Source of the DNA: Selaginella moellendorffii | Lineage: Eukaryota > Plantae > Lycopodiophyta | DNA: 64,000 bases | Direction of reading: 5' to 3' | NCBI RefSeq assembly: GCF_000143415.4 | Contig: NW_003314337.1 | Location: 386,061-450,060, forward strand | Notes under the pieces: model-generated | The model's input: only the letters and a program-made list of their open reading frames with translations | What the model was told of the DNA's origin: nothing | Database searches by the model: none | Program-made: the position numbers and the translations under genes | In this document: positions 21,288-57,592 of the stretch, one piece after another | How the letters are laid out: every line of letters starts with the position of its first letter | How positions within the stretch are numbered: position 1 is the first letter of the stretch

Positions 21288-21599
21288 ATGGGGGGCGGTG
21301 GAAAGGCGCTGGGAGCGAATCCAGGGGTCGTGGCAGTGCGACTGCGAGAGGTGGTCTACACGCTGTCCCCGAATCACCTCAAGATAATGCCGGGGCTGTG
21401 GAAGGATCTCCCGGAGAAGATCAAGCACAAGCTTGAGAACTGGCACTATGGCGTGCTCGTCGCCGTGGGATTCTACGGCCCCGTGTGGTAAACTTTGCCT
21501 GATTTTGGGGATTTCTTCTCTTGGTTGAGCTTCTTATTTCTTGAGTGTAGGTTTTGCAAGCACTCCGTGCATCAGAGGGAGCTCTCTCACCGCGACTAG
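21288..21599 (+). CDS. QCR8: Cytochrome b-c1 complex subunit 8 (two exons: 21288-21488 and 21551-21599)
   Basis: VRLREVVYTLSPNHLKIMPGLWKDLPEKIKHKLENW...FCKHSVHQRELSHRD*, typical of plant QCR8. One GT-AG intron. Confidence 0.88.
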
Positions 21600-21699
21600 G
21601 ATTTGAATTTGGCTGGAAAATTTGGAAGAAGGTACTCTTTCTTTTGGCAATAAAAGGAGAGCTTTTGGACAATAGAACAATTTGGAACTTCGCCAAACT

Positions 21700-22241
21700 T
21701 CATAGCTTGTCTGTGTCTTTTCTCAAACTTGAAAGGTGGCTTATAACAGCTCTGGAGATCTCCAGAGCCACCATGGAAGATCTCAACGCAAACTCTTCGT
21801 ACTCTTTGGAGAAAAGTATCGTTTGGTAATCGTCGATCACTGTCTTCACTGCCGATTCTTTGAGAGCCTCGGCAGAACTTGCGAGCTCGAGCATCTCCAG
21901 CGCATTGGAAGAAGTTACACTGCTCGTAAGATACTCCTTGCAAGTTCTGAGTTCTGGTCAGAGCTGGGATATCATACTTGTCTGCCGCGACAAGAAGAGA
22001 CGCGGAGTTTTTGTCGTCGCTGATTCGAGCGCTGTAGAGAAACTCGTTGAAGTTCTCGAGTTGGCTGTGGTTGAGGAGCTCCGGGATCATCACGGCTCCA
22101 CTGTGCTCGGATTTGCAAGCGTCAACTTCGAACAAGACCTTGGAAACGATGATTTGTGGCCTGGATCACGACGAAGTTTGAGAGGGAGCAAGTTCTACAA
22201 GTTTCTACAGGACAATGCGGTGTGCTCGATGGAGTGACCAT
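21700..22241 (-). pseudogene. 5'-truncated, frameshifted copy of the BTB gene at 28623-29541
   Basis: Near-identical to 28623-29176 but with small deletions and a frameshift; stops abruptly within exon 2. Confidence 0.9.
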
Positions 22242-22362
22242 AATTAAACTCGTTGTCTTAACAAAGCAACTACTGATGAAAATGTAAAGATTTTATTCGA
22301 CTATTACCTTCACTTTTGACAATAATAACTTTGAAAAGTGTGAGGCAAGAAAGGTACATGTT

Positions 22363-23510
22363 TAAAGTTGAACGAATATGATTCCCTCAATAACAATCCC
22401 ATTATTCCTCGCACTTTTCAGCTGTTCCAGCCATTCCTTCTTCTGAAATGCCTGCTTCTGCAGCTTGTTGATATCCATCTCATGGATTCTTCCTGCCTCT
22501 ATGCCGCCGTCGTTTGTCAAGCCAAGACAAGTTTAATTCTCAAACAAACCTTGTAAGCAGTGCTGCATTTTTTCTTTTCCAAAACTGCAAGAAGTGCACT
22601 GAACAAACCGCAGTCATTACAGAAAGGGCTACATGGAGAGCAGTTCCTCATGGTCTGCAGCAAAAATTTAAGTGAAACTCAACAATGCGAAAGGAAACGA
22701 GACTCCTTGTAATAAAAGAAAAGCGCCACTACCGACGGAATGACAAGCCACTTATATATACATTCCAAGAAACGCAAAATATATAGCCATCTGAAATTCT
22801 AAACATCATAAGACACTCGTTTTTCAAAATTGCCAATCACCTTGGCACCGAAATACGCGTGGATGGCATCTACAGGTTGCGACGTAAGCCCTTTTCAAAC
22901 CTTTCAACAATTCATTACGCGAAGTTTCACCTGAGGAAAAGAAAATGGAAGAAAATAAGCCTTGAGCACTGCAAGCATGTTGTCTCCCGGGTTTAGCTCT
23001 AGCTCCGATGAGTCACCCACCGTGAACTTCACAGGACGTGGAGAGAAGTGTCAGTCAAACCGCAACAGAAAGCATTAAACGATGCCATACCACACTATAC
23101 AACAGGTACTCCATGCAACTGTATTTTTCTGTCCAACGAGTTGCTGATTGCTTGTCGCACAAATGCATCTCGCTTCTCCCAATCTAATCCTGTAGGAAGA
23201 ATGAAAGTGAGAAAAGTTTTAGGCTCTGTTCGATCGGCAAACAAACCAAGGTAAGTCAATTTCTTGATGTTGAGCTTCTCTGCTGTGCGACCAACAACCT
23301 GCCGCGATCTGAAAAGCCACAAGCAAACGTATAAGAAAACTTACCTTGATGAATCTGATCGAATCCAAGCCCTCTTCGAGGCCACTATTCTTCAACCCCT
23401 TGATATAGCTCGCCACAGCATCGTTCAGACCCGGGGCTGTGCTTGCTTGCGACCGCGATGCAAATCTCGAAGCACGGTGCTGCATTCGATGACTTCATAG
23501 TGAAAGTGAT
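22363..23510 (-). pseudogene. Anoctamin/TMEM16-like gene fragment (N-terminal half, introns retained, frameshifted)
   Basis: CFEICIAV, LTSQPVDAIHAYFGAK, AIYFAFLGMY, FLQFWKRKNAALLTR and KQAFQKKEWLEQLKSARNN match plant anoctamin-like proteins; frameshifts and stops. Confidence 0.8.
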
Positions 23511-24024
23511 CCACTGAGGGCTCGTGCAAGAACAAATGAGCAGGACGTGGACGATCACGATTTCACTGCCAATAAAGAGCTTTTTTATCGAAAGATCGCA
23601 AAAAAGGAGAAGTCAAATCCATACCTTGGGCCTAAGATGGATCCGAAATCACAAAGAAACATGAGCTTCGGACTTTCACACTGGTGGAAACGTCCTGCGG
23701 TTGACGGCTTTCCTGCAACCATCTCTAAGCTCCCAGATTTTCTCCTTTGTCCGCAAAGGAACAAGAACTTCCAATGGATGAAAGCTTACCTTATTATCAA
23801 TGCGAAGAACAATTTTTTCTTTGCTGTGGCTGCGAGCTTACCTCAATCGACGGGGATCTTTCCAGCGGCCAAGAGCAAAGGAATGCCTTGCTCCGATAGA
23901 AACGTCGCGACTGGCAGTGGATAGAATGCGATCCACGGCACGCTGAATCTCCTAGCCACCTCCACCCATCCGAGGATAGAATCCGAGACAATGAAGCTCA
24001 CTGGGCAAAATGACAATTGGCAAA

Positions 24025-25049
24025 TGTTAGGCACCAGGTCAGGATAATAGGATAAAAGAAAGGGCCCTACAATCACCTTTTAGCCAGTTGGCTTAGGGTG
24101 TAAGGGATAGGATCTTAACATTGGTATTGGAGCCTAGTTCGATTCTTGTGGCTGACGAGTGGGGCAAGAATATTTTGAAGGAATATTCAACATGGTGGAT
24201 TTAGAGGGAGAACCAAGGTTTGGTAGACCCTAAGAGAAGGACCATGGTGACCGGATGGTGGCCTAAGTATGATCGATTGGTATCGGAGCCTAGTTCGATT
24301 CTCATGGCTGACGAGTGGGGTAGGAATATTTTGAAGGAATATTCAACATGGTGGATCTAGAGGGAGAACCAAGGTTTGGTAGACCCTAAGAGAAGGACCA
24401 TGGTGACCGGATGGTGGCCTAAGTATGATCGATTGGTATTGGAGCCTAGTTCGATTCTCATGGCTGACGAGTGGGGCAGGAATATTCTGAAGGAATATTC
24501 AACATGGTGGATCTAGAGGGAGAACCAAGGTTTGGTAGACCCTAAGAGAAGGACCATGGTGACCGGATGGTGGCCTAAGTATGATCAATTGGTATGGGGC
24601 AGGAATATTCTGAAGGAATATTCAACATGGTGGATCTAGAGGGAGAACCAAGGTTTGGTAGACCCTAAGAGAAGGACCATGGTGACCGGATGGTGGCCTA
24701 AGTATGATCAATTGGTATCGGAGCCTAGTTCGATTCTCATGGCTGACGAGTGGGGCAGGAATATTCTGAAGGAATATTCAACATGGTGGATCAAGAGAAG
24801 GACCATGGTGAGAAGAGAAGTATCGGAGCCTAGTTCGATTCTCATGGCTGACGAGTGGGGCAGGAATATTCTGAAGGAATATTCAACATGGTGGATCAAG
24901 AGAAGAACCATGGTGAAAAGAGAAGAGAAGAATAATTATCAAGAGAAGAATTATCAAGAGAAGGATAATAGGATAAAGAAAGGGCCCTGCAATCAAGTGA
25001 TCACCCCTTTAGCCAGTTGGCTTAGGGTGTAAGGGATAGGATCCTAACA
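24025..25049 (+). mobile_element. Miniature non-autonomous LTR retroelement (TRIM-like)
   Basis: Termini TGTTAGG...CCTAACA with 5-bp TSD GCAAA (24020-24024 and 25050-25054). Terminal direct repeats of about 90-96 bp (24025-24120 and about 24960-25049). tRNA-iMet PBS right after the 5' LTR and a purine tract before the 3' LTR. Confidence 0.88.
24121..24915 (+). repeat. Tandem array of ~156-bp units, each starting with a tRNA-Met PBS
   Basis: Units start at 24121, 24277, 24433, 24589 (33-bp deletion), 24712 and about 24820 (partial), beginning TTGGTAT(C/T)GGAGCC; unit 4 retains only TTGGTA. Confidence 0.92.
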
Positions 25050-25198
25050 GCAAACGATCCCCTCCAGCAGTTCCACGAACGGCTCCTGGTAGCAGCGATG
25101 AATTTCGGGATGTCCTGTATGCTTCGCTCCAGCAGCATCTCATCTGGAATTGTGGCGAGGATGCCGATGCCGCGATCCTCTGGCGATAGCACACCGCG

Positions 25199-25975
25199 CA
25201 TCTTCCGGGTTTTTTTTCAAAGGCTACTCGGTTTTGTGATCGTCGGTGCCGCTCTTGGTGGATCGATCATGGATTCCAGTGGAAACGAGCTCCTCCAGCT
25301 CAAGAGATACGTCGCAACTCCCACCGGGAAGAACGTCGCGCAGTACTATGCTCTCATCGACGTTCTCAAGTCGGCTCAGTCCATAGGAGCTTTCTTACAC
25401 GGACTCTCTGGTGGTTCTTCTTTTCTTTCACCAACTTTCCTGATCCTAGATCAAGGGATATTGGAGGGTCTCTACGAAGGCTATGAAGGCCGAGTAATCG
25501 GGCTCATCGATAGTTTCGAGTCGTTTGATATCAGAACTACCAGAACTGGAAAACCCATGTTTCACTGCGTCATTTGCCTCGAGGACGTCCAGGATGCGGA
25601 CATGTACACTCTCACCGAGTGCTCTCGCAAGTTTTGCTCATCGTGCGTGAAGCAGCACGTCGAAGCTACAGTAACAACCGGGCGGACTTTCCCGGTGGCT
25701 TGCCCGCAAGTCGAGTGCACGAAGAAGTTCACCGAGAGCGAGTGCAAGAAGCTGCTGTCCGAGGCGGCTCTCAAAGTTTTCATGAAGAAGATAGAGGAGG
25801 AGCGCATCCCTGAGAGTCTACTGCCCGTGTCCAAACTGCTCGGACTTGATGGATAGAAGGACTTTCCTCGACCCCAACCCCCGAGCTTGCCACAGATACT
25901 TCTGCCTCGACTGCCGAGTTCCCTGGCATACATTCTCGACTTGTGCTGGATACCAGCGGCTGCCTCTACTGGATT
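25199..25975 (+). pseudogene. RBR (RING-IBR) E3 ligase fragment with N-terminal RNase H-like segment (RSL1-like), frameshifted
   Basis: GAALGGSIMDSSGNELLQLKRY...AQYYALIDVL; RING1 CVICLED..CSRKFCSSC..CPQVEC. Frameshift at about 25812 before RVYCPCPNC..CHRYFCLDCRVPWH (IBR). Confidence 0.8.
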
Positions 25976-26147
25976 TTCCAGCGTTCTTGAGAACATTCTT
26001 TTTACGCTGGTGGTAGAACCCTAGAAAGGTATGAATGCTGTTTTCTTTTGGCTTTTGTACCGAATTCAAGGTGTCCGCTTTCCGCCTCGCGGTTTACTAG
26101 GGAAAGATTAGGGTTGTTTCACTAAAAAGGATCTTTAGCTCTAAGGG

Positions 26148-27990
26148 ATGGAGCACGCCAACGCTAGCCCCGCGAAGCGCAAGCGAGGAGAAGGCGACAG
26201 TAAGCAGGCTCTACTTTACTGGCTTTACGGCAGCAGCTGCGCGGCTTGCAAAGCTGCGAGGTATTCTGCAAACGTCGAAGCTCTGGCGTCCGTCAAGAAA
26301 GCTCACCTTGACGGTCACCACGGATGGGCTCTCGGTGCATCGGGCGACACAGTAGGGGATACTGCTGCATCACCGGCAGATATGGGATGTGCGACGTCTG
26401 CCACATCACCAACGAGGGTGCCTGCCGGTGACCCGTCTACTCCTCCTCTCCGGGCTCCAGTTCCCTTGTTGTCCCTAACGGAAGAAGCATGCAAGCTTCT
26501 TCGTGCAAGCCCCTGTTCTGCAGACCGGGATGTTTTCATCTTCCAGCAGCCGCTGATCCGAGTGATCACCCACAAGATGCCTGCCAATGACAAGTTTGAT
26601 TTCGAGCAGCAGATCAAACCGTGGATGAAGCGAGCAGTCACAAGGATGATTCAGCCCGTGCGGCTGAGCAAGGATGCGTACCAAGCGGAGCCCTGTGGTG
26701 ACGAGTACGGGGAATTGCAAGACAGGACCCATATGTCTGCTGTTTTCACGGGGATCAGATCCATCATGCCAACGAGTGAACAAGTAAGGAAGACTTCTTT
26801 CCTTTGTTATTGTACTGAACTAGCCTTAGATTGCTGCCCGAGAGTCTTCCACGAAGTATATGGAAGAGGTAAGGAAGGCGGACGGGAGCTTCGAATACGT
26901 CGAGAAAGGTGTGACACCTCCGCCTCAGGATAGCAATGCAGCACACGAATCGTCCTCCGAAAAACAGAATCTGGTAAGCTAACTGTATGCATGAGTCTTC
27001 TGTTAACTAATAAGTGTTTGCCGGATGCACGCAGAGATGGGTCATGGACATCCTGATGTTTGCATTGGTGGGCGGAGCATGGTGCGTTGATGGTGTTGCA
27101 ACCTGGGTTCCTCGCGTCATTGCTGAATGTAAATGGAGGTAAGCGTTCCATGAACCTGATCTCTGCAACTCTGTTTGTGTTTTAGTCTCAAGCCAGAGGA
27201 TGTATATCAAGTTGCTTTGGGGGGTGCAAGGCTCTTTGTGGATAGGTTGCAGAAGAGGCTGCCGATTGACCGCTTGTACTTGAAGGTGTGATATTTATAC
27301 ATATTTTTAATTTGTTTATTTCCTCTTTAAGTCTGCATTGGCTTGAAACATTTCAGGTGTGGTCTGCAAAAAAATATCGGTACTCTATTTTGGATGTGTT
27401 TGGCTACGTGAGGTTGAAAAATGGAAGAGTTACTCCAGAGTCATTCAGTATATTTGAAAAGCAGGTAAATATTCGTTTTTTTTTGTGTGTTCTGACTCTG
27501 AGCTTGAGATTTCAAGGTTTCCGAGCTGCGAAGACGGTGTGGAGATTCTTTTCAAGAAGAGGCATTCAAGGATGCCTCCACATCTGTTCAAGACATGGAA
27601 CGGTTGTTCCAGGAGCGTGAGATGGAGTTTCAAGCACGCTTTTGTGGAATCAGATTACCCACTGAAATTGTCGCCCCTGTTGGAGTCCTTTACATAAGTC
27701 AGGTGTGTTGACAAGTTGTTTTATTCTCCTGGTTCACAGAATTTGGTGTACAGGATAGTCGCCCGTTTCCCACAGGATCAGAAGTTGTTGAAGAAAAGGA
27801 TGCCTATGTGTTTTATCAAGGAATGTTACGGGCGCTTGGCAGCAATGCAATTCTTGGCTGGGAAGAGGAACAATTGGAGGTATTAACAAGTTTTTTGTGT
27901 TTACTTGCTGCTCAAATTTGTGCAGGCAAATATTAGAGAAAGGTTGGGCGAGAGCGTTAACAAGTATCCCTTTGTCAACTGGCATGAAAA
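26148..27990 (+). pseudogene. Unidentified multi-exon gene or pseudogene (about 211-aa first exon; later exons appear disrupted)
   Basis: ATG preceded by telo-box-like TAGGGTT; NLS-like KRKR; regular short GT-AG introns (donors about 26783, 26974, 27139, 27286, 27464). No family recognised. Confidence 0.4.
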
Positions 27991-28371
27991 TGATGTAAAT
28001 GTGAGTATTTTAATTACAGACTAGTAAGTGCATTAGTTTTGGTTGCTGCAGCCTCCAAGTTTTGTATAGCTTGTAGGTAACTCGGAGATGAGGATCAAAA
28101 AGGAGGAAAGCTCTGGATCTGGCTGACTATTAGCATAATGTAAATGTTCCAACATAGCGGCGCTGTTTTGGATCACCTTGTTAGATTTTAATAAAATGCG
28201 GAGTAATATTTTTAAAAGAACTATGTTTATCATTAAATAACTATAGCAGAAAACTCTTGAATTCTATGCCGGAGAGGGACACTATCTTGGAATGTGATGC
28301 TTGCGAATCAACGAGGCCTCTCAACTCTTCGGAGCAATGGCGTTAATACACAACCCGGATGAGATCACACT

Positions 28372-28520
28372 CACAAGCTTGAGAACTGGCACTATGGCGT
28401 GCTCGTCGCCGTGGGATTCTACGGCCCCGTGTGGTAAACTTTTGCCTGATTTTTGGGGCTTTCCTTCTTCTCTTGTTCTTGGTTGAGCTTCTTTTTGTTT
28501 TGAGCTCTCCGCTACTAGGA
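28372..28520 (+). pseudogene. 3' remnant of QCR8 (exon 2 largely deleted)
   Basis: 28372-28437 is identical to QCR8 21426-21491; the intron and exon 2 are partly deleted. Confidence 0.88.
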
Positions 28521-28622
28521 TTTGAATTTGGCTGGAAAATTTGGAAGAAGGTACTCTTTCGTTTGGCGAGCAATAAAGGGAGAGCCTTTGGACAATAGAA
28601 CAAATGCCAAACTTTTCTCTTT

Positions 28623-29541
28623 TCATAGCTTGTCTATTTCTTCTCTCAAACTTGAAAGGTGGCTTATAACAGCTCTGGAGATCTCCAGAGCCACCATGGA
28701 AGATCTCAACGCAAACTCTTCGTACTCTTTGGAGAAAAGTATCGTTTGGTAATCGTCGATCACTGTCTTCACTGCCGATTCTTTGAGAGCCTCGGCAGAA
28801 CAGAGAGTTGCGAGCTCGAGCATCTCCAGCACATTGGAAGAAGTTACACTGCTCGTAAGATACTCCTCGCAAGTTCTGGCCAGAGCTGGGATATCATACT
28901 TGTCCGCCGCGACGAGAAGAGACGCCGAGTTTTTGGATAGATCGTCGTCGCTGATTCGAGCGCTGTAGAGAAACTCGATGAAGTTCTCGAGTTGGCTGTG
29001 GTTGAGGAGCTCCGGGACCATCACGGCTCCACTGTGCTCGGATTTGCAAGCGTCAACTTCGAACAAGACCTTGAAAAACGATGATTTTGTGGCCTAGATC
29101 ACGAAGAAGTTTGAGAGGGAGCAAGTTCTACAAGTTTCTACCAGGACAATGCGGTGTGCTCGAATGGAGTGACCATCGTTGGCAACGAGCTCCACGTCGG
29201 TGTGAATCCCTTCTCGAAATCCCACCGCCAGCGATTCGAGAAATCTAAGCTTGCGCGATGCCTCTCTTTCCATGAGCTCCAGATGCTCGATCCTTTTCGA
29301 GGCGTGAAGTAGCATGATCTAAATGCGAAAACGATTCACTTTGTTACTCTCGATCGTTCGAAAACCTTACCTTGGAAGATAGTTGCCGATCATCTTCTCC
29401 CAGCTTCCAATTTTGCTCGATCCGGCTGCTCACGCTCAGGATCGATTGCGCTCCCTCGAGGCATCCAGCACAGATTGTGTTTCGTGGAGGCCTGTAAGCG
29501 ATCGTTCCCACCACCACGCTGCTACAAACGCAGCAATCCAT
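28623..29541 (-). CDS. BTB/POZ domain protein (At3g56230-like); three exons
   Basis: MDCCVC...RPPRNTICAGCLEGA, GFREGIHTDVELV..SIRAHRIVL, FLYS..LLVAADKYDIPALARTCE; reading frame intact. Confidence 0.88.
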
Positions 29542-31837: not shown

Positions 31838-33820
31838 ATGCGGGCTATGGTCTCCTCTTCTCGGGTATGGTGTCGCCTCCATTGAGCTGAAAATTAGGTT
31901 TCCCGTTCCAGGTGTGCATTGTGAGCAGCGATTTTGGCGCCCGGAGGAGCGCGCTGAGACGCTGCTGCGTTGTTTGCCGCGATGGAGCGCGCGGTTTTGA
32001 TTCCAAGGTGAGCATGCAAGCATGGAAATTCTTTTGATACATTGCGTGAATGCGGTCGCAGAAGAGCGATAGGAAGGAGCGGGCGAGACCAAAGCCAGTG
32101 TAAGGATGTGTGTTCTTTCGTGAAAGAGTGTTTATTTTCCTTTGATCCATAGGACCAAGCCTTTGGAAAGCAAGAGTGCTCGTAAGTTTCTTAGACGCTG
32201 GAGTTTGTGCTCTCTTAGTTTCTTCGTTTTTCCTCCAGAATTTCCACCAGGCGAACAAGCTTTCGAGAAAGATGACAATACTGACTTTGAGGAGCGTCTT
32301 AAAGCAATCAAAAGGTACATGGAGTGAGCTACAAGTGGTACTAGTTTATGTTTTCCAGTTCTGGCGAAGAGCAGCTACGAATCCAGAAGGAGAGAAAGTT
32401 TGGTCCTCTCGACTATTCCAGTCCCCCAAAAGAAGAAAACAAGAACAACCTGCTTCTCAAGGTATTTTTTGGTCAGTGCTTTTGTTTTTTACGAGCCATG
32501 AGGTGTTCAGGATTTTTTATAGGCTGGTGCTGGGCTCGCTGTCTTGGGACTCATTGTATCATTTGCAATCGGCGACTTTCTTCCGACAGCAAGGTTTGTT
32601 CTACGGCCGCACGAGTTTTTTTTTAACACTAGCACTCACTTCGTTTCCTGTAGTACAAATCTAGACAACGGTGTGGTTGCCAGCAAGAGGCTTAGGCCCC
32701 AAGAGGAGGAGAAATTCAAGGTAAAGCATTACTGTTTTTGCTCCTAAACACTTGTGACGCGTATTTAAACAGGCAGAACTTCAAAAGTTCGAGGAAGCTT
32801 TGAAAAATTCTCCAGATGATTTGTCTGCGCTTGAGGTATACGGTTTCGAACAAGCTTTGAAGTTCCCATTGATCGATCTCTGTTTGGCAGGGGGCTGCTG
32901 TTTCTTATGCCGAGCTTGGTGAATACGCTAAAGCTCAAACCAATCTAGAGAAGCTTATTCGGGTATGCATTGTCGGCATGGATATGACTAGCTTGACTTG
33001 TTTGAAATGCAGATGTCTCCAAGCAATGTGGAAGCGCTAAGGCTCTTAGCAGAGGTGAAAAGTTCGTTGAATGATTTTGAGGGAAGTTCCAATGCATATC
33101 GCCAGGCGATCAAAGTAATTCATGTCGCTTTTAAACATTTTCTGTAAACGGTTTTTGTCTTCAGGCTTCTGGTTCGACCTCCATGGAACTATTGCTGGGA
33201 CTCACTGAAGCTTTAATAGATGCCAATAAACCTGGAGAGGTAACGAACGATATTTGCTGTGTCTGACGTTTCTTACTGAAACATTTTAGGCAGTGGACGA
33301 GCTTCTTAGAGCAAAGGAGACAACAAAAACGGCACCTGGTGTCCAACTCTTAAAGGCAGATAATGTTGAAGACAGAACTTCTAGTCCCGCGGAAGACGGA
33401 ACCTCCTCCTCATCATTGGATCCCGTGCAGGCAAGTGCGCTTGACGTAATTTTTGGCCTCACCAGATTGTTTCACAGATTGATCTCCTGCTTGGAAAAGC
33501 ATACTCTGCATGGAATCGTCCCACGGATGCATTAACCGTTTATGATGCTTTGATAAAAGGCCGTCCGGATGACTTTAGAGGATACTTGGCCAAGGTTTGC
33601 GAGTTCCTAAGTTTTTCATGTGTAGTTCTTTTACACCAAATGCCTATCAGGGAGTTCTATTGAAGGAGCAAGGTCAGGCAAGCGATGCTGAACGAATGTT
33701 TATCCAAGTAAGAGCTCTTCTATCTAGTTTTCTCACTCTAATTAACTCGCAACATGGTAGGCACGCTACTTCGCTCCTGCAAAGGCTAAGTATCTCGTGG
33801 ACAAGTACACGAGACAGTAA
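31838..33820 (+). CDS. Plastid-type membrane-anchored TPR protein (At1g78915-like); about 13 exons
   Basis: Transit-like N-terminus, TDFEERLKAIKR, FGPLDY, a TM segment, ALEGAAVSYAELGEY, DDFRGYLAKGVLLKEQGQASDAERMFIQARYFAPAKAKYLVDKY. Stop TAA 33818-33820. Confidence 0.85.
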
Positions 33821-33836
33821 AAGCGCTCGAGCTGAT

Positions 33837-34156
33837 CTATACAGAGATAACGTTGGCCAGCAGTAGCCACGAGATTCCACTCGGGCATAGCGTCAAACAC
33901 CGACTTTGCGTCTTCCAGGAGGCCCTTTTGCGATACAAGGGTCTGCTCCGGGGAGGCCCCAGAAACGAGGCTCCGCTCTGGGGACTTGTGAAACAGCTCG
34001 CTAGCTCTCTCAAGATGCCCATTCAAGGTATTAGCCCAGAGCAGCTCTACGAGACAATGCCCCTCTCTCTCTGGAATATCATTGAACGTATGATCGATAC
34101 TGAATCTCTCAGGCATTGTTTGGAAGAGTTCTTGCGCCCAAGCGAGCGATCTCTCC
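33837..34156 (-). pseudogene. Truncated, internally deleted copy of the PPR gene at 43000-44604
   Basis: Aligns to 43000-43028, then jumps about 600 bp to 43633-43975, with further deletions. Confidence 0.9.
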
Positions 34157-37100
34157 TAGATTCCAGATTTAATTTACTAACCATAATTGACCATTAAACA
34201 TCATTAGTGTTTTTAATACATCAATGGTGTTTTTAGCTCGTCCTTAGTAGTCTTCATAACACTCTTTCCTTGTGTTGAAGGCTTGCAACAACTCTCGAGA
34301 GCTTATGTGATGGTAAGCCAACTTGATTTAATTGATGGTGCCAAACAAGCTGGTCAAACTACAACCTTCACTAGTAATCAGTCTTTCGTGCAAGTTGTTA
34401 AATGCTTTATGTTGGTATACTATGGGTGATACAGAAGCTCCCAATTTAAACAAATGCAATAAGTTCTTGAACCATTGAGTGTGTCAAGCACAATAATCAC
34501 CCTTAAAGTTCAGATTACATATCCCTAGCTTAAGCGTCTAACACTTCAAATCAATCAACATATAGCATCATATTATTATTGTAAAAGAGCGATATAGATT
34601 AAATCAGAAAACCACACTATTATGCAAAACTCAGTAATTTTGTAAAACTTAGGATGAAACTATTATGCTAAGGATATAACAACAAAAATTCCAAAGCTCC
34701 ACTATTTAATAGCTATAACTTGATCATAGCAAACATTTCTCAAGGAGTAAAGGGATAATCATTTAAATAGTGTCAGAAAACAAAGACACACAAAATAATA
34801 TATTAGACTATAAAAGATTCTGGATGATGCATTGCAATGAGTTTAAATGAATATGGCTAACCATTTTTAGCCTTATAGTTAAAAATCTAGTACAAAATAA
34901 CCATGAAACAAAATAAATAGCTTAACAAAGTTAATGGGGATTTTAATTAGTGTTTTGTTTGTCTTATATTCAACCAATGTGTTAACAAAAACTACAAAGT
35001 GAATTTAATGAATTGTAAAAATATGGATTGATTGCTTATTATAAATCTTTATAAAATAAATGCTCCCTTAGTTTATAAAATATTTAAGCATTGTTATTCA
35101 ATATTTGGTGATGAAAGATTTCATCAGCCATTTTTCTCTAGCTTATAATGACTATTATATATAATTAGCTATGTAAGGGTATAGATAAATGACTATAAGA
35201 TCTGTGAGGTAGTGAAAGTAATTGTAAAAAACCATTAATTCATTAAATATTTAGTTGTTCTTGAATTTTCATAATTGTTTTTCTTTTAAGTTTAAGTCTC
35301 TCATCAAAAGATATTAAACACTTGGCAAGTACAATTACAACTATTTATAAGATTCCAATTGAAGATTATATGAAGCTAATTGGATATATAATAATAAGTT
35401 TTTTCTTGTATTTTATCATTTAATCCCTTTTCTTCCTAAGTATAATCACTTTGAAAAATCAAGGTCTATATAACCCATATGACAAATGGTTATTTAAAAT
35501 TTATCAAGACAAATTTAAAAAAAACAAATTAGAGTATATTGCTTGTTCTTATGAGGGAATTGAATTTTTAAGATTGTTAATTTATTACTTTTGGTAAGTA
35601 AAAACACTTTATTCTGTACATATTTAACTTTCTTTAAAATTCAAATAGAAAAGATGATTAATAGGCTCATATTCATGAGTAGTAGCAATAAAATTTTAAT
35701 AAAAAAACCAAAAGCTTTACAATGAAACAAAAATATAAAACTTATTATTTTTTTTAAGTACAAAAAAGTTAATAGTTATTTAGGAGAAAAGATTTAAGAA
35801 TTTTATTTAACAAAAGTGTTATACTATATAAATCTCAAGAATGTATAATATGAAATTGTACTAAAGTAATAGATTACTTTCAAGTAGCAATAATTAGTCA
35901 TTTTTAGAGAAAAATGTAATACTCTTTTTTTTTAGTTTCTAACTTTTGATGTTATTTTATAAATTTTAACGATATATAATTACTTTTAACTTTATCCAAA
36001 GATTTAAAAATTATAAAAGCTTTAGTGCTACCAACTAACATCACTATATTTTAACATTGTATTGTAAGTAATTGTGTCATTATATTTAATGAACTTTAAT
36101 TTTTCAAGCTTACTTTGGTGAAATACATGTTATATAATTGAAAAGGTAGCTAAGTTCTTTAAAATTAGGCAGTTAGTATTCACATTTTGAAAAAACATAG
36201 CTAATAACAACAAAATTTTTATAAAGCAATTATTTCAATGGAATTGTTAAATCAAATTAATAGATGAGCCACATCTTATTAAGGGTTAAAAATTAACTCA
36301 AGTCATCACTTGTGACATTTTAGCATTAATCCTTTCTCACTCTCGCAATCCTAAATGTGATAAAATATTTTAGAATTAAAATATTCCTAGGATTTACTCA
36401 ATACTTAATCTAAATTTAATCTCATCAAGTAAGATATAAACACTTTATAAAGTTTGGAGTAAAAGTTTTTCATTTAAGCACCTAATTAAATAAAATTTTC
36501 TAATCTAAACTATATAGAAAATATGTAATTTCATAAGTTCCTTCATATTGCATAGACAATAAAAAAATGATGGTGAAAGGTGTATATAAATTTTGGATAG
36601 TTTTACTTACATATTTTTGTAAAGTTAAAGTTGAAATAACTTTTTTATTTAATTGATCCCATATTAGTTCTTGGTTCTTATACTAGAATTTGCTTCAAAA
36701 TTACAAGAATATGTCAAAGTCTAATAGTTAATAAAAATTTTATTTATTTTTGAAAATTCCTTTTTGTTTGGTATTTAATTTTAATACTCCTATTTTTACA
36801 AGCCAATGTAAGGCTAGTGATATAAAAATTCTTATCAGCAAGAGCAATGCCATTAAGTCTTATGGGAATATTTCTTTTCTAAGATGAGTGGATTTTTAAA
36901 TTTAACTTCAGTAATTTTTTTCTTATTTAAAATGTTTAACTCTAATAGTTGTGTGTAGACATATTGATAAGTGACACCATATATAAAAGAGGTATGATTT
37001 TTGTTAACTACTACCTTCTTTATCTTGATATCACACTTGAATGTAAGTTGGCTATAGTCCTATTCATGAGCATTTCAATATAGTTTAAACTAAGTAACTT

Positions 37101-39386: not shown

Positions 39387-39529
39387 CTCTTGAACACTTT
39401 ACAAAGTTACCCCACTTATCTATCTGTGTTTATTCTACCCTTAGACTTTTCAATGATTATATCATCACTTATTACGTAAGCTTTCTTAAGTTACACTAGC
39501 CTTTTTTGGCTAAATTGATTCCACTAGAG

Positions 39530-39869
39530 TCTAACCCCCACACTCTCCTTACTATACTTTTTGAACCCCCCATAGCCCTTTGCCCCCACCCCCAAGGGAT
39601 GATCACTTTGGGTTTTCACCCCACAACCTGCATTAGTATTTGGACTTAATCTTGGACTCAGACTCAAACTCAAACTTGGATTTAAACTCATACTCGATTT
39701 TGGACTCGGTCTTCCACCTTGAACTCCATCTCAAATCCATCTTGAACTCTATTTCAGATCCATCTCAAAGTCCATCTTAGACTCTATCTTAGATCCATCT
39801 TAAATTCCATCTCGGGAGCAATCTCAAACTCTTTCTCAGACTTGGTCTTGACACTTCCATGTCATAACA
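39530..39869. mobile_element. Older, decayed LTR of the same family in inverted orientation
   Basis: TTAGTATTTGGACTTAATC is the near reverse complement of GACTAAGTCCAAATACTAA (about 38587). The hexamer array is eroded by C-to-T/G-to-A changes; possible terminus ...TAACA at about 39869. Confidence 0.7.
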
Positions 39870-42625: not shown

Positions 42626-42983
42626 TTCACAGGTTGATCTCCTGCTTGGAAAAACGTAGTCTGTGTGGAATTGTCCGATGGATGCATGACCATTTATGAT
42701 GCTTTGATAAAAAGTCGTCTGGATGATACTTGGTCAAGGTTTGTAAGTCCCTATTGAGGTGTATTTTTCTTACACCAAATACATCGATCTTATGCTGGCA
42801 TAATAATAATAATATTTATCAGGGAGTTCTATTGGAGGAGCACGGTCAAGCTAGTGATGCTGAAAGAACGTTTATCCAAGGAATAGGTCTTCTATCTAGT
42901 TGTTTTCACGCTGCCTTTTATTTTAGGCACGCTACTCTCCTGCAAAGCCTAAGCATCTCGTGGAAAAGTTCACGAAACAGTAA
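42626..42983 (+). pseudogene. Decayed 3' fragment of the TPR gene (last three exons)
   Basis: Homologous to 33471-33820, with a premature stop, deletions and a lost splice donor. Confidence 0.88.
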
Positions 42984-42999
42984 AAGCGCTCGAGCAATT

Positions 43000-47370: not shown

Positions 47371-47452
47371 CACAAACCCATAAACCCTAAAACTAAAACC
47401 CTAAAACGTATCTTTCATTTGAATTTCTCCAAGGAGGAGCGAGGGTTTTGTG
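47371..47452. promoter_or_regulatory. 82-nt bidirectional promoter region with a telo-box cluster
   Basis: AAACCCATAAACCCTAAAACTAAAACCCTAAAA lies between the divergent ATGs at 47370 and 47453. Confidence 0.7.
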
Positions 47453-50404: not shown

Positions 50405-50599
50405 ACTCGAGGTAGAGTATGAGTTTATCGTTCTCGGTCTAACTCCATTCTTCTCACAGGAGAACGCGATGATCTCGACGATGATCTTAATCTCACTTCG
50501 ACTACAGAGGAAAGATCTGGAATGTTAGAACAATCGACTACACTGGTAGATTGTCCATTTCATCTTTGAAAACTAGAGAATTGAGCGTGCTTGTGAACA

Positions 50600-51175
50600 T
50601 TACGTAGTGTTGCGGCGGGAGCTAATCCGAGAACTCCGTCTGGGTGGTGGCGACGAGCTCTCACCATTCTTTGGACTGCTGGAAGAAGTATTTGCACGAA
50701 GATCGCCTTCGCCACTCTCGTTCTCGGGGCTAGAGCTCGGAGGATCCGGGACACCAGCCTCGTCGGCGGCAGCGACTTGACTCTTCTTCCTGAGCTTCCT
50801 TCTCGACTTTCGACCACTTCCTCGAGCATCATTGGCGGGACTTGGCAAAGGAACTTCTTCTTCTCGACCACCATCATCGACTACTCCCTTCCTCTTTTTC
50901 TTCTCGTTGCTGGAGCTGGGCGCCGGCGATTTGGCCCCCTCGTCCTCCTCAGATCGAAGCTTGCTAATCCGGCCCTCGATCTTGCCCTGCATTCTCGTGC
51001 GCTTGGAAGAGAGGCCGCCCATGGACCAGTGCGCGTCCTTGGCCCACTGGAGTAGGGCCTCGTTTACCGGCGGAGGAGGATCTACGCGCTCCGTGTTGAG
51101 ATACGTACCATAGTAGATGTGAGGCCGCGGCAATGCGTCGCCATAGAATCGCGCTGGCTTGAGCGTCGCCACCAT
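50600..51175 (-). CDS. Conserved plant protein of unknown function (N-terminal FYG-LPRP..VDPP..W..EAHWSMGGL motif; charged disordered tail); intronless
   Basis: MVATLKPARFYGDALPRPHIY...RVDPPPPVNEALLQWAKDAHWSMGGLSSKRTRMQGKIEG, with NLS-like KKKRK. Confidence 0.8.
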   Translation of the reverse strand: MVATLKPARFYGDALPRPHIYYGTYLNTERVDPPPPVNEALLQWAKDAHWSMGGLSSKRTRMQGKIEGRISKLRSEEDEGAKSPAPSSSNEKKKRKGVVDDGGREEEVPLPSPANDARGSGRKSRRKLRKKSQVAAADEAGVPDPPSSSPENESGEGDLRANTSSSSPKNGESSSPPPRRSSRISSRRNTT

Positions 51176-54100
51176 CGTCCTCTCTATCTAGATCTAGCCC
51201 AAGAAGAGCAAAGCCCTTTCCCTCGCTCGACCCAGGGAGGAATTTAAGCGCCAAATCCTTCGCGGGCTTTTTCAAATTTCGCGCTACAGTAAAGACTTTG
51301 GCACTCAGCAGGCAAGCCTTCGAGAGAAAATTTGGACAACTCCGAAGCCATGGCTACCAAGGCCAATGTTGAGTGTTCACGTTAGACAAGGGGATAAGGC
51401 TTTAGAGATGAAAATATTTGACTTTAAATCATACATGGAGCTGGCTCAAAAAATCCAAACTAACTGCAAGAAATATGGCTAAATTATTTGACACCTCCAA
51501 TTTTCATCTAAAAGAATTTTTGTTATGGTTGATAATAGTTTATAAGTGGATCTAATGAATAAATAACTATATAATAAAGAATATGATCTACAAATCCAAC
51601 TTTCAAATATTGTTGGGTGGGTTCATATAAACCATGTCTATTCAATAGTTAACTTAGCACAAATACTCATGTGGGATGTATAAAATAAGACTATGAATTT
51701 TTACTAGATTCTTAATTAGCTCGTTTTCCATTATTTTGTCATATGTTCTTAATATCTTGTTACAAAACTATATTTTATTACTATTTTAAAATATCATTTT
51801 AAGGTCTTGGAAGTACTTTTACATGAACTTGAACTTGAATGTATATCATATATATCTAATATATATTTAAATACATGATTTACAGTATTTTCCATCAAAA
51901 GGTATTGGTAAGAAAGTTGAAGAACTTGAAGAAATATTTGAACTTTTAAAATAGAAACACTCCTTTAAAATTGTATGATACTGTTTTTTTCATAATCTGA
52001 TGGATAATATTCATTGGTGATTTTAAATATATAAAAACTAGTCTTTCCATATATTCTTTTATTTGTTGGTTTTATTTTTACTTTTATTTAGCCTATTCTC
52101 TTCTAATCTAAATGATAAGGAAAGTTTGTGACTTATATATACAGCAATACCTTGAACTTTAGTTTTTAGGGATACAATTCCGAAGACTCAATATTTAATA
52201 TGATTACGCTACAACCAATCCATACAAAGGATAAACTCAAAAAGTTTATTTGATCACATACATAACTAAATCTATTTCATCCCACGCATATAAGTGGGAG
52301 AGATGATATCTTGTAATGTTGTGCTCTTAATGTAATTTGTTTGCTCTATATGAAGTAAGAGGCTTTGTCTGGAAGCAAATACTAAACCTATGTAATATAC
52401 TCAAATGACTTTTGATGGAGACTATGAAATTGTTAAAAGGCATCATCACAATCATTAGCATTTCCAATATGCACTTTGAAGATATTCAGAAAAACGCTCT
52501 AATATGTATAGATAACTATACTCAAACCATTATATCATTGCAATGCTATCCTGTGAAGATAAATGGGAAATTTGCATAAATATCAAGCATCATCTACATG
52601 ATAAATGGCAATCATTATAAAGTGATAAAATTGATTGTATACATCATCCCAAATTTTCCTAGCTGCTAAACTTAAACTTCCTAAAAGATCATCTAATCTA
52701 GTATTATTCAATGTTTAATATCAAATATCCCAAAATCCTTATTCACGAGTTCTTTCTCTTATATATGAACCTTAATGAAATATTTTTCAAGTTGTTTTCT
52801 ATAGTTTCTTATAATCCATCATTTTTCTTTACAAGTTCACACATTCATAAATACAAGTTGAGAACCCTAACTCTTTCAAGAGCCCTACTCTTGATTTGAT
52901 TCTTTCAACCAACTAATAGAGTCAAATTTGAAACCTCTTTAATATTAAATATAAAACTTTTAAATTTGGAAAACCAACCAACTTAATATTATTTAAATTT
53001 AAGAATGTTTAACCCCAAATATCCCAAAAAATTTAATTGTTTGAAAAATATATTATTCATTGGCCCTTTCACTTTAATTTCTCAAATCATTATTTTTAGT
53101 TGTTAATAAGGAAAAAGAGACTATTATAAAGAAAAATTATATTATTCTACTATAAAAATTAATGAAAAGAAGAGGAAAATCAAAAGAATTAGAAAAGCTA
53201 CATGAATAAGAAAGATTTAGATGATAACTATGACATAATCAAGAACCAAATCCATATAACACTTTTAAACACTTATTATCAATCCAATTATAACCACTCA
53301 TATAAATGCAAAAGCCATATATGTTAATTATCAATACCAAGAATGGCTTATAGTGAGTTACTCTCTGAGCTTTCATTGACTCTTCCAGATTTCAAGGAAG
53401 TGTGACTTTAATGCTTCCCCTTCTATCTTATATTTTTTATAGTTTTTCCATTCCTCTCACTTTTTATTTTTGATGTTAGTTTTGGGGGCTTATTAATGTA
53501 AAATAGCATTTCTGGCCAATGCATAATTTAGTACTATTTAAACTCAAAGACACTTAATCCCAAATATCTCAAGATTGTTAACTTATTGAAAAATAAAATG
53601 CACTTTTGTTCATGGGATTTTTATATTTGAAGATTATCTTCCAAGTCATTTTTTTTGGTTGCTTACAGCAATTTAGAGTTTTGAGAAGTTTTATATGTAT
53701 TTATATAGTTCTTGGATGCTATCAGAGGCCATATTGCAATCACTTAATCTTTTAAGCAAAATAATTTAATGGCCATATTACTTAGTAAGTCTTCAAGCTT
53801 CAAATTTACAACTTCAAGGTTGTTCATCACCCTAAATGTTCAATAGTTAATATTGATGCTTTATCTCCCTCTTCTTTTGTTCTAAAGGAGTTTATTATTT
53901 CAATATTAATGGATTTTCTAAATAAAGATTTTATAATATTGTTATGCTCAATATTTAATATCCTAGAGTTGGATTTGCCTTTTCCAAATGATGTTCATGA
54001 GGATTAAAGAGTTGAGTTATGGATCTAAAAGCTTTATGATAGTTTTGAAAATTCTACTAATGACTTATTAGGGCACTTTGGCTGCCCAAGGGGCTGAGGT

Positions 54101-54284
54101 TATTTAAATAACCTCAGCATTTATATTCTAAATATTTTTTTATTTTATAGAAATTGATTTGAATGATTATTTATTGCTAGTGGTGCCTTTAGTTTTCATT
54201 TAACACCTCCTCCATATTTATAATGACTCTCCTATTTTATATGGGAGTTTATCTCCACAAATGCTACAAGATGTTGTGATTATG

Positions 54285-55190
54285 AGATGAGATTTAGATA
54301 TATTGTCACCATGAATCCTTAGAACCTTGGGGGTTAAATGGGGATAAAATAACCATTAAAAGCTCTTTTATCAAGCAATTGCCCCTTTTTCAATTACATG
54401 TAGTATCAAAGAAAATAGCACAAATTCAATTCTCATTAATTAATGGCTACTTAAAATATAATATACCCTTGAACAAGATATATTCCTACCTCTAAAAATT
54501 AAAAATATGTTAAGCATCTATGAGTTTTGTCTTGTAGGGCATTTATAGACGAAAATATCCACCATTGGACTATAGTACAGGTGGATGATTAATTATCTCA
54601 TATAGAATAGCTAATTTACATAATGAAAATATTGATAAATTCAATACTAGGACTATAATAGGGATGACTGACTAATTGCCTCATGGAATAACTAATTTAC
54701 ATAATGGAAGGATTAGTAAATTCAATGCTAGAACTGTAGTATAGGTGAATAACTAATTAGCTCACATGTAATAACTAATTTATATAATGAAAGGATTGGT
54801 AGATTTAATAAATTGGCTTAGTATGGGTTATTAATCAATAGTCAATGAAAACATTAACATCTTTGGGGGGGGCGGGAGTGAGTGTAATATAAATGGTTAT
54901 GAGATTTGGATATATTGTCATTGTGGATCCTTTAAATTTTAAGAGATAAATAGGGATAAAATAGCCATTAAAGACTCTTTTATTAAGCAATTCTCCTTTT
55001 TTAGTTGGCTTAATAGGGGAGAGATAAGGTGTGTTACATGCCAAATGTAACGTATGTAATCAAGGGATAAAATTTAGATATATTATTATTGTGGATCCTT
55101 AGAATTTTAGGGGATAAATGGGGATAAAATAACCACTAAATACTCTTTTATTAAGAAATTACTTCTTTTTCAATTGACTTAAGGGGAGAG
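54285..55190. repeat. Two interleaved degenerate repeat families (~110-bp x3 and ~85-bp x3)
   Basis: GATTT(A/G)GATATATT..ATCCTT..GGGATAAAATA..CCA(T/C)TAAA at about 54290, 54900 and 55070; AACTAATTTACATAATG-type units at about 54610, 54690 and 54772. Confidence 0.65.
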
Positions 55191-55920
55191 ACATAGAGTA
55201 TGATATAGTTGATAATAAACTCTAGAATCAATATTTGACTCTAGCTAAACACTAAGGCCATATAAAAGTGAGACAATTATGATATTACAACTTTCATTAT
55301 TATTCACCTATAAAGTACAAAATTGATGATCTAGTATTAGTTTATTTCCCAATTTTACAATACATAATTTGTCCAAAAGGCTTCTTGCTCAGTAAAAGAG
55401 ACTATATCAAGTGTTGTAACAAGTTGGGCCTCAAGTTTATAAGGTTTTAAAGCATAATGCTCAACATTCCAATCCTCATGAATTATGAATGTGCAATACT
55501 TTATATAAAGATATAAATTTACCATGTGTGGATTCACCTCTAAATCCCAACTCATCCATTAAAGAACAAAGAGGAGATTATGTGATTATAAATTTTTAAA
55601 TTTGGATAATTGGTTAAGGATTTTGGGATACCATCAAATATCAATCTCAACATATAGTGTGATTTCCTTAGCCAACTAATAGAGTCCAATTTGAGATCTA
55701 CCAAATGTAAGCTTTTAAATTTAAACTTCTGTAAAGGTCATTTAGCCCAATAATACTCAAACCCAATGATATTTAACTCTATATATCCTAAAACTCTTAA
55801 TTAATTGAAAAAGGGGGTGCATTTTTGTTCATGAGTCTATATTTAAAACTATATAAATTGTCTCTCGAGTCATTCTCTTTAATTACATATAGTGAGTTCC
55901 AAGTATATAATTATAATATT

Positions 55921-56160
55921 ATATACTATAGTGGGATTTTAGATGTTATTGAATTAGTTTTAATTTGGACCACTTGCTCTTATATATAAGTTAAATTTTT
56001 TGATGAATTGAATATGCACATTTTTATATTTCCTATTCTGAATGCATGGAATATGGAAAGGGAGTACAAAAAATGTGTATATCAATTAACCCAAAACCCT
56101 AGCTTATATATAGAAGTGATCTGACAGCCATCAAAATCCTAATATGCTAATACTAGTATA
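55921..56160. repeat. Imperfect ~240-bp inverted repeat (fold-back / MITE-like)
   Basis: Arm pairs GGGATTTTAGATG/CATCAAAATCCT, CTTATATATAAGTT/AGCTTATATATAG, AATTGAATATGCACATTTTT/AAAAATGTGTATATCAATT and TTTCCTATTC/GAATATGGAAA around a short loop near 56045. Confidence 0.7.
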
Positions 56161-56198
56161 TGGCATTATAGCCATACACTTACACTTCACATCATCCT

Positions 56199-56380
56199 CT
56201 CCTCTCGGAATAATGAAAGATCATTAGAATTCTCTTATAGATGGGTTAAGATTTAAACCCCTCCTCTCGGAATAATGAAAGATCATTAGAGTTCTCTTAT
56301 AGATGGGTTAAGATCTAAACCCCTCCTTTCGGAATAATGAAAGATCATTAGAGTTCTCTTATAGATGGGTTAAGATCTAA
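56199..56380. repeat. 3 x 62-bp near-perfect tandem repeat
   Basis: CCTCTCGGAATAATGAAAGATCATTAGA..TCTCTTATAGATGGGTTAAGAT at 56201, 56263 and 56325. Confidence 0.92.
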
Positions 56381-57267
56381 AGGAACATTAGGAGGAAATA
56401 TCAGTGGATTTATAAATGGTATTAATTGTTCTTGATCCCTTTGTATGAAGTGTTTTAATTGCTACACATGCATAATTTCTGGAGGATCAGCCTACTAGAC
56501 GTCATGCCAAACTTCATAAACTTTCCACTTTGTACTCTGCAAGTGGACGACGATGGGAGTTATAATGTCATTATTGTCTCCCTTGTATACAGCCTAGATA
56601 TTTGGCAAACTCTGCTCAAACAAGTGGAAATTCCACTTGTCTATGAATTTACCTATATCAAATATTCATTTAGGTACAATAATATATACTCTAATAAAAT
56701 AAGTTTAGTTTTTTAATAGTCATATAAATTTATTTCATTTTGAAATATAGTAATCATAAGTTCTAATAAATAAATATAAAATGATATAACCTTCTTGTCA
56801 ATGATAATAAAGACAATCATGTGTTTGTCATTACATATATTTTGAACTATAACATTTTTAAGTTTTTAAAACGAAAGTTTATGGTTGTGAATGTGGTTTT
56901 TGGATTGCATATCATTTTAAAATATTGAACTGAATTTTGTGTATGGTTTTATTTCCCTGTTTTAAGTTTTGTTATTGTTTTCTTATGTATATTTGTATAT
57001 GACTTTCATATGATTATTTCACAAACTGTTTTATGACTCAAGCCCTATATAATTTTTCATATATTGTGTGATTAATCCTCGACTAGAGATTTCTATGATC
57101 TTCCATTTGTAAAAGCTTGTATATCTATTAATAATAATACTGGCAGTTCCTGTTGAGTGATGAACCCAAAGTTGGTGGGGCAAATTGACGGGAATCACAA
57201 CCGTTTAATGAATTTTCTGTTGGAATTTTTTCTGAGATATATACATCAGCGTGACAGCAATATGTAA

Positions 57268-57592
57268 AACATTGCACAGTACTGCAGGAGGAGTTAATCC
57301 GGGAGTGGCAACGAGCTTTATTCTTTGGACTGCTGGAAAAAGGATTTGGAGTGCTAGAGCTCGGATGGTCAGCCTTGCCGTAAAGCACATCGTTCCGCTT
57401 TCTGAGTGCTCGTGCTTGATAATCCGGCCCTCGATCTTGTGTACATGTGCACAGACCGCCCATGGACCGCGCAGAGCGCTTATAGCAAATGTGAGGCCGC
57501 GGCAATGCGTCGCCATAGAATCGCCCTGGCTCGTTGCCACCATCGCTTCTCTCTATCTAGATCTAGCCCAACTTCGCGGGCTTTTAAAAAAT
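57268..57592 (-). pseudogene. Internally deleted copy of the 50600-51175 gene and its 5' flank
   Basis: MVAT..GDSMATHCRGLT is a frameshifted RFYGDALPRPHI. TGTGAGGCCGCGGCAATGCGTCGCCATAGAATCGC and TCTCTCTATCTAGATCTAGCCCAA are shared with 51118-51203. Confidence 0.88.

What the first reader, a model, noticed from the sequence alone, without database searches (positions are those of the whole stretch)
21426..57592. Recurrent 'junction duplication + insertion' architecture with reciprocal decay (three clear cases in 36 kb)
Seen: three multi-kb accessory blocks (22242-28371, 34157-42625, 51281-57260) are each flanked by a long direct repeat. Each repeat copies the junction between two tightly packed neighbours, like a giant target-site duplication. 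Each gene stays intact on its own side and keeps a decaying piece of the neighbour downstream of its stop. Inference: when stop codons are 16-160 nt from the next gene, 3' UTRs and terminators lie inside the neighbour's CDS. An insertion would then survive only if the shared zone were duplicated, either by staggered-break repair with filler DNA or by a tandem duplication creating a safe harbour that later fills with TEs. The pseudogene stumps could thus be functional 3' UTRs and sources of antisense RNA to the intact partner. I know no description of this as a general rule of compact plant genome evolution.
Basis: partly seen in the sequence, partly recalled or inferred. Interest (0 to 1): 0.85.

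Follow-up and report, generated by a model that had tools for sequence, protein, structure and literature searches.

The report
Spikemoss junction duplications filled with insertions
In a gene-packed stretch of the spikemoss Selaginella moellendorffii, three old 0.8-1.5 kb local duplications each copied the meeting point of neighbouring genes, left the genes whole, and opened a spot that now holds transposon debris or stray genes; this is a variant of a known process, and the claim that the leftover gene pieces are kept for a function is unproven.

Summary
The architecture is real. The window is S. moellendorffii v1.0 scaffold GL377641.1. The other haplotype (GL377577.1) carries all three duplications. 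In cases 1 and 2 every informative site groups left with left and right with right (106 vs 0), so these are not mis-joins. Copies differ by about 3%, 14% and 15-22%: three separate events. 'Reciprocal decay' is mostly geometry: all six breakpoints lie inside genes, so each stump was born truncated. In case 3 the surviving copy is overlapped by a modelled DUF4487 exon. Case 2 shows duplication first, insertion later: the PPR stump resumes for 30 bp beyond the 8.3-kb insert. Case 1's gene-bearing cargo sits exactly at the joint and may have arrived in the same repair event. Inserts keep changing (6.1/4.1, 8.3/6.5, 5.9/26.5 kb in the two haplotypes). Stumps show no constraint (2.0% proximal, 2.4% distal, 1.8% synonymous). 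Close precedent: Arabidopsis transposed genes flanked by genic repeats (PMC2869330). The scan noted this pattern before on other pieces of this genome.

The parts
21288..21599 (+). QCR8 (cytochrome bc1 subunit 8), intact, 82 aa, two exons
   Evidence: Pfam PF10890 E=2e-24; NCBI gene call
21410..22241 (+). Case 1 left repeat: QCR8 3' half, ~100-nt spacer with AATAAA 50 nt after the stop, frameshifted 5'-truncated BTB stump (~21700-22241, minus strand)
22242..28353 (.). Case 1 cargo: intron-containing gene X, UGT-like remnant (by eye, no Pfam hit), solo LTR, RING/RBR-like fragment, gene Y; normal CpG content outside the LTR
22362..23485 (-). Gene X, NCBI call of 202 aa, no Pfam family, function unknown
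24026..25049 (.). Solo LTR (TG...CA, 5-bp TSD GCAAA, internal 156-bp tandem array), absent from the other haplotype
26148..28126 (+). Gene Y (other-haplotype allele XP_024530143, 522 aa); the only real relative found is a Selaginella paralogue, XP_024517696, on another scaffold
28354..29176 (+). Case 1 right repeat: 5'-truncated QCR8 stump (exon 2 deleted in this haplotype only), spacer, 3' part of intact BTB; 12/14 imperfect match at the joint 28354-28367
28623..29541 (-). BTB/POZ gene (At3g56230-like), intact, 272 aa
31845..33820 (+). TPR gene, intact (399-aa model in the other haplotype)
33350..34156 (+). Case 2 left repeat: TPR 3' exons, 16-nt spacer, PPR 3' stump with 605-bp deletion at 33865
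34157..42502 (.). Case 2 insert: AT-rich, CpG-depleted (o/e 0.11-0.13) decayed repeat DNA lying inside the PPR stump
38217..39386 (.). 1.17-kb solo LTR, specific to this haplotype here; same family as two direct copies ~19 kb apart in the other haplotype's case-3 insert
42503..42532 (-). Orphaned continuation of the PPR stump (28/30 identical to 43991-44020), just before the duplication joint
42543..43983 (+). Case 2 right repeat: decayed TPR stump (42543-42983), spacer, 3' part of intact PPR; minus-strand AATAAA 78 nt after the PPR stop, found only in this copy
43000..44604 (-). PPR gene, intact, 534 aa
50609..50780 (+). Modelled last coding exon of the DUF4487 gene, antisense inside the 191-aa CDS
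   Evidence: NCBI call on the other haplotype; open frame and splice sites in the window; not checked with RNA
50600..51175 (-). Conserved land-plant gene of unknown function, 191 aa, intact copy (LOC112346169 allele)
50583..51306 (+). Case 3 left repeat: 191-aa gene, its upstream region and a trace of the LPAT 3' end (~140 nt in the other haplotype)
51307..57254 (.). Case 3 insert: AT-rich, CpG-depleted (o/e 0.20) decayed repeat DNA; about 26.5 kb in the other haplotype
57255..57880 (+). Case 3 right repeat: deleted 191-aa gene copy (57255-57543), 160-nt spacer, 3' end of intact LPAT
57704..59437 (-). LPAT-type acyltransferase gene, intact, 372 aa
   Evidence: Pfam PF01553 and PF16076 on the NCBI call

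Best explanation
Error-prone break or replication repair made local head-to-tail duplications of 0.8-1.5 kb at three different times (inferred). About 80% of this region is gene body. Duplications that fall inside one gene disrupt it and are purged. Those that span a junction leave one whole copy of each gene plus two truncated stumps, so the survivors look like giant target-site duplications with reciprocal decay (geometry shown; purging inferred). The two stumps and the new joint form a pad of free DNA roughly ten times the old 16-160-nt spacer, which then collects transposons and gene fragments. Shown for case 2: the insert splits the PPR stump. Shown for all three: haplotype-specific LTR gains and losses. 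In case 1 the first cargo probably entered at the joint in the same repair event as the duplication (inferred). mRNAs probably end in the copied spacer or run passively into the stump. For TPR/PPR (stops 16 nt apart) read-through is near-certain, so the duplication incidentally separated two overlapping 3' ends.
For: All three units have both ends inside genes. The PPR stump continues across the insert with only 7 nt missing in haplotype B, and the PPR-to-TPR joint has about 10 nt or less of filler. Left/right grouping is 17, 62 and 27 sites vs 0. Insert sizes are 6.1/4.1, 8.3/6.5 and 5.9/26.5 kb. Stumps diverge between haplotypes at the synonymous rate. Gene fraction is 0.80 and 10 of 18 junctions are under 200 nt; in simulation, a duplication with both ends in different genes spans a tight junction 72-79% of the time. 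A one-gene partial duplication lies at 63308-63780. Published precedent: PMC2869330.
Against: In cases 1 and 3 nothing of either gene continues across the insert, so duplication-first is not shown there. Under the simple survivor null, three of three spanning a tight junction has probability about 0.04-0.05 (post hoc, n=3, one spacer estimated), so some extra selection on 3' ends is not excluded. No empty single-junction allele was seen; the ancestral state is inferred from the repeats.
Confidence: 0.62

Rival explanations
1. One-step insertion with a kilobase target duplication is the general route: a staggered break, or a repair strand that switches template, copies cargo from elsewhere and rejoins upstream of its start. 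Case 2 would be the same event with almost no cargo.
For: Case 1 is young (3%), both stumps abut the cargo, and nothing continues across it. The cargo is intron-containing, CpG-normal gene DNA, and gene Y has a paralogue on another scaffold. A 12/14 match at the joint occurs nowhere else among 63,968 window positions, while the next 63 nt of stump are identical. Unchecked scan notes describe single genes exactly between such repeats.
Against: In case 2 the insert lies inside the stump, not at the joint. The donor locus could not be fetched. A deletion could have removed an orphan piece in cases 1 and 3.
Confidence: 0.22
2. One reading: 3' UTRs and terminators lie in the neighbour's CDS, so only insertions that duplicate the junction survive, and the stumps are kept as working 3' UTRs and antisense sources.
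For: The TPR and PPR stops are 16 nt apart. An AATAAA 78 nt after the PPR stop lies in the TPR stump in both haplotypes and is absent from the other copy. CpG-to-TpG decay in the TPR stump is 10/25 distal vs 0/13 proximal, p=0.008, though methylation spreading from the insert explains this equally well. NCBI's longest TPR product in this haplotype ends at ~34429, beyond the stump (support unknown). The excess of tight junctions is mild.
Against: Proximal 19/957 vs distal 27/1112 differences, p=0.55; synonymous 23/1272. Deletions lie right after the intact stops. QCR8 has an AATAAA inside the spacer. Case 3 is head-to-tail. A block without repeats exists.
Confidence: 0.1
3. A dedicated mobile element or retrotransposition pathway generates kilobase target-site duplications.
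For: The pattern recurs, and cases 2 and 3 share short repeat fragments.
Against: The three inserts share no termini, inverted repeats or poly(A) tail. Case 1 cargo keeps introns. No transposase or RT was detected in the inserts. Identifiable LTRs have ordinary termini, and the one read has a 5-bp TSD.
Confidence: 0.04
4. Assembly artefact: the two haplotypes were joined in tandem.
For: The v1.0 assembly comes from a heterozygous genome, and both scaffolds belong to that one assembly.
Against: Both haplotype scaffolds hold both copies with shared lesions; 106 vs 0 informative sites; copy divergence of 3-22% exceeds haplotype divergence of 1.8%.
Confidence: 0.02

Closest known systems
Transposed Arabidopsis genes flanked by genic direct repeats; 'interruptor' genes in tandem repeats (Woodhouse, Pedersen and Freeling 2010, PMC2869330)
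   Same: Inserted DNA is flanked by direct repeats of host, gene-like, non-transposon sequence that occurs once at the orthologous target site. The paper discusses both a long target-site duplication and insertion into a prior tandem repeat.
   Different: Repeats there are 30-550 bp, against 0.8-1.5 kb here. Here each repeat spans a junction with breakpoints inside two live genes, and two of three cargoes are repeat debris. The authors favour circle excision and homologous reinsertion, for which there is no evidence here.
Tandem duplications from break repair: patch-mediated or adjacent single-strand breaks in plants (Vaughn and Bennetzen 2014; Schiml et al. 2016; titles seen, texts not held) and Pol-theta-joined duplications of 1 kb and more, some with insertions (PMC7368036)
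   Same: Head-to-tail copy with little or no filler (case 2); imperfect short homology at a joint (case 1).
   Different: From my own knowledge the plant cases are mostly far shorter, and multi-kb cargo at the joint is not their typical product. The enzyme pathway cannot be read from old junctions.
Partial tandem gene duplication giving dead-on-arrival fragments (general knowledge)
   Same: Truncated copies decay neutrally while whole copies persist.
   Different: Here the pad between the copies has grown by 4-26 kb.
Transposon target-site duplication
   Same: A direct repeat of host DNA on both sides of an insert.
   Different: About 100 times longer than usual, with no element termini, and in case 2 the insert is not at the joint.

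Membership tests
Local tandem duplication, later interrupted | Direct-orientation copies of adjacent host DNA, older than the haplotype split | tested here: met
Local tandem duplication, later interrupted | Insert lies inside one copy, with a head-to-tail joint elsewhere | tested here: met
   Case 2 only
Local tandem duplication, later interrupted | Same feature in cases 1 and 3 | tested here: not met
   No continuation found against 200 shuffles; deletion could have erased it
Transposed gene with genic flanking repeats (PMC2869330) | Flanking repeat is genic host sequence | tested here: met
Transposed gene with genic flanking repeats (PMC2869330) | Single copy of the repeat at the orthologous empty site | not testable with these tools
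Transposed gene with genic flanking repeats (PMC2869330) | Identifiable parent locus for the cargo | tested here: inconclusive
   A paralogue of gene Y exists but its DNA was not on record
Transposon target-site duplication | Element termini (TIR, LTR or poly(A)) directly against a short duplication | tested here: not met
Functional 3' UTR or antisense stump | Poly(A) sites inside the stump | not testable with these tools
Functional 3' UTR or antisense stump | Sequence constraint near the intact stop | tested here: not met
   2.0% vs 2.4% vs 1.8%; low power, two haplotypes only

The most novel reading that the evidence does not exclude
In the gene-dense arms of Selaginella, kilobase junction duplication (with or without cargo at the joint) is the main way new DNA and new genes get in, because overlapping 3' ends make plain insertion harmful. 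The copied neighbour sequence then serves as the 3' UTR and separates formerly overlapping transcripts.
Probability: 0.22. Interest if true: 0.68.

Novelty: new variant of a known kind. Interest (0 to 1): 0.42.

Why it matters
It shows, at three ages in one region, how a very compact plant genome opens new intergenic space without losing genes, and case 2 fixes the order of events (duplication, then insertion). If the pattern is as common as unchecked notes on other pieces of this genome suggest, it becomes a countable, datable process for gene entry and loss of gene order. It also warns annotators: the case-1 stump is annotated as a separate BTB-like gene on the other haplotype (XP_024530320).

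Tried and rejected
Exact look-ups of window ORFs and of P0009, P0016, P0017 and P0139 found nothing, so the possible donor of the case-1 cargo is unseen. No other Selaginella species appeared in three homologue searches. Genes X and Y have no Pfam family; the Atlas gave only hits under 0.9; the single-sequence fold had pLDDT 35, so no fold search was run. Rfam found nothing. Pfam found no transposase or RT in the inserts. The Banks 2011, Vaughn 2014 and Schiml 2016 texts were not held. Rejected: haplotype mis-join; gene conversion between copies (no cross-grouping sites in cases 1 and 2); a shared mobile element; reading the insert divergence of 10-11% as greater age (it is transition-rich and CpG-depleted, consistent with methylation-driven mutation).
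Full report
Source. Homologue searches returned Selaginella moellendorffii proteins. Window 18623-39541 is 100% identical to scaffold GL377641.1 of assembly GCA_000143415.2. The other haplotype is GL377577.1. I stitched four fetched loci of it without conflicts into 78 kb with one 9.9-kb gap inside the case-3 insert; this is called haplotype B below.

Observation. Self-alignment finds three long dispersed direct repeats. Case 1 (21410-22241 vs 28354-29176, 3.2% mismatches) copies the convergent QCR8/BTB junction. Case 2 (~33350-34156 vs ~42543-43983, about 14%) copies the convergent TPR/PPR junction, whose stops are 16 nt apart. Case 3 (50583-51306 vs 57255-57880, about 15-22%) copies a whole 191-aa gene plus the LPAT 3' end, which lies 160 nt upstream of its ATG on the same strand. 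In this window the left LPAT piece is almost gone, but haplotype B keeps about 140 nt of it.

Not an artefact. Haplotype B has all six copies with shared lesions. In cases 1 and 2, informative sites group left with left and right with right, 17, 62 and 27 to 0; case 3 was not counted this way, but its right copies are 2% apart and share their deletions. Haplotype divergence at fourfold sites is 1.8%, below every copy divergence. The events are older than the haplotype split and of three ages.

Reciprocal decay is built in. The breakpoints fall in QCR8 exon 1 and a BTB exon, in a TPR exon and the PPR CDS, and in the last intron of the DUF4487 model and the last LPAT exon. Each gene is therefore whole on its own side and truncated on the other from the start. 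Only the 191-aa gene was copied whole. The copy that survived is the one overlapped in antisense by the modelled last DUF4487 exon (a model, not checked with RNA). The dead copy also lost its 3' flank at the joint.

Order of events. In case 2, a 30-bp piece identical at 28 positions to the next stretch of PPR (43991-44020) lies at 42503-42532, beyond the 8.3-kb insert and directly before the TPR stump, in both haplotypes (score 50 and 40 vs shuffle maxima 29 and 27). In haplotype B only 7 nt are missing between the two halves of the stump. So a plain ~1.5-kb tandem duplication came first and repeat DNA landed inside the stump. In cases 1 and 3 no such continuation exists. Case 1 is young and little deleted, and its cargo is gene DNA with introns and normal CpG. 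One cargo gene has a paralogue on another scaffold, and the right joint carries a 12/14 imperfect match not found elsewhere in the window. This favours capture during the same repair event but does not prove it. Case 3 is too decayed to tell.

Continued filling. Insert sizes differ between haplotypes: 6.1/4.1, 8.3/6.5 and 5.9/26.5 kb. This window has a private solo LTR with a 5-bp TSD in case 1 and a private 1.17-kb solo LTR in case 2. Haplotype B has copies of the latter family about 19 kb apart in case 3. The AT-rich inserts differ by 10-11% between haplotypes, mostly by transitions, with CpG o/e 0.11-0.20, as expected of methylated dead repeats.

Are the stumps functional? Differences between haplotypes are 2.0% within about 200 nt of the intact stops, 2.4% further out (p=0.55) and 1.8% at synonymous sites: no constraint, with low power. 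Deletions have removed stump DNA soon after the TPR and PPR stops. QCR8 has an AATAAA inside the spacer. In favour: with stops 16 nt apart the TPR and PPR mRNAs must almost certainly extend into the stumps (inference from usual plant UTR lengths, my own knowledge). An AATAAA 78 nt after the PPR stop exists only in the stump copy. CpG decay in that stump is confined to the distal part (10/25 vs 0/13), which methylation spreading also explains. NCBI's longest TPR product in this haplotype ends beyond the stump. Antisense pairing would be weaker after the duplication than before it (inference). Spliced models were searched exon by exon and the joined step was left out.

Is the link to tight junctions special? 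In the reconstructed empty map, genes cover 80% and 10 of 18 junctions are under 200 nt (one spacer and some gene ends estimated). Random 0.8-1.5-kb duplications break a gene 18-44% of the time. Of the rest, 33-42% span a tight junction, and 72-79% do so if both ends lie in genes. Three of three is then about p=0.04-0.05, post hoc: a hint, not a rule. Counter-examples lie nearby: a ~3.2-kb block (RT fragment plus kinase-like remnant) at ~7910-11150 with no flanking repeat, and a ~500-bp copy of a TyrRS-like 3' end at 63308-63780 involving one gene.

Comparison with what is known. Woodhouse et al. 2010 (PMC2869330) report transposed Arabidopsis genes flanked by 30-550-bp direct repeats of genic sequence that is present once at the A. 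lyrata target site. They discuss long target duplication and insertion into tandem repeats. Break-repair tandem duplications of 1 kb and more, some with insertions, are described in PMC7368036. What differs here is the size, the two-gene breakpoints and the density. Earlier notes of this scan describe the same layout on at least seven other pieces of this genome. I could not check them and do not count them as support.

Verdict. The feature is real and recurrent. It is best explained by local duplication, survival by geometry, and filling, with one-step capture likely in case 1. The functional-stump reading is open for case 2 and unsupported elsewhere. New variant of a known kind; interest 0.42.

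Noticed in passing
window 50600-50780: The modelled last coding exon of the DUF4487 gene overlaps the 3' CDS of the 191-aa gene in antisense by about 180 nt; both frames are open.
   Followed up: partly
window 63308-63780: Decayed ~500-bp copy (about 81%) of the 3' end of the neighbouring TyrRS-like gene, about 500 bp from the original in haplotype B; a 1.2-kb N gap follows in this scaffold.
   Followed up: partly
window 7910-11150: Accessory block with a weak RT fragment (Pfam RVT_1, E=0.005) and a kinase-like remnant (by eye) between two genes, with no flanking repeat.
   Followed up: partly
window 20299-21114: Protein-kinase ORF (Pfam E=1e-10) divergent from QCR8, 191 nt away, AT-rich and low in CpG; possibly another inserted or decaying gene.
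   Followed up: no
window 23757-26084 vs L002 ~8055-8305: Between genes X and Y the haplotypes hold different remnants: an N-terminal UGT-like piece, solo LTR and RING fragment here; a C-terminal UGT-like piece and a telo-box run in haplotype B (UGT calls by eye).
   Followed up: partly
window 38217-39386 and 39386-39850: A solo LTR with a 12-bp tandem array sits next to an older, inverted, 68-70% similar piece of the same family.
   Followed up: partly
L002 10001-10384: The case-1 BTB stump is an open 127-aa frame in haplotype B and is annotated as a gene (XP_024530320).
   Followed up: partly
window 33820-34429: NCBI's longest TPR product on this scaffold (461 aa) ends at about 34429, past the PPR stump and inside the insert; its support is unknown.
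   Followed up: no
window 51307-51523: About 216 nt of unrelated sequence replaces the LPAT stump in this haplotype only.
   Followed up: partly
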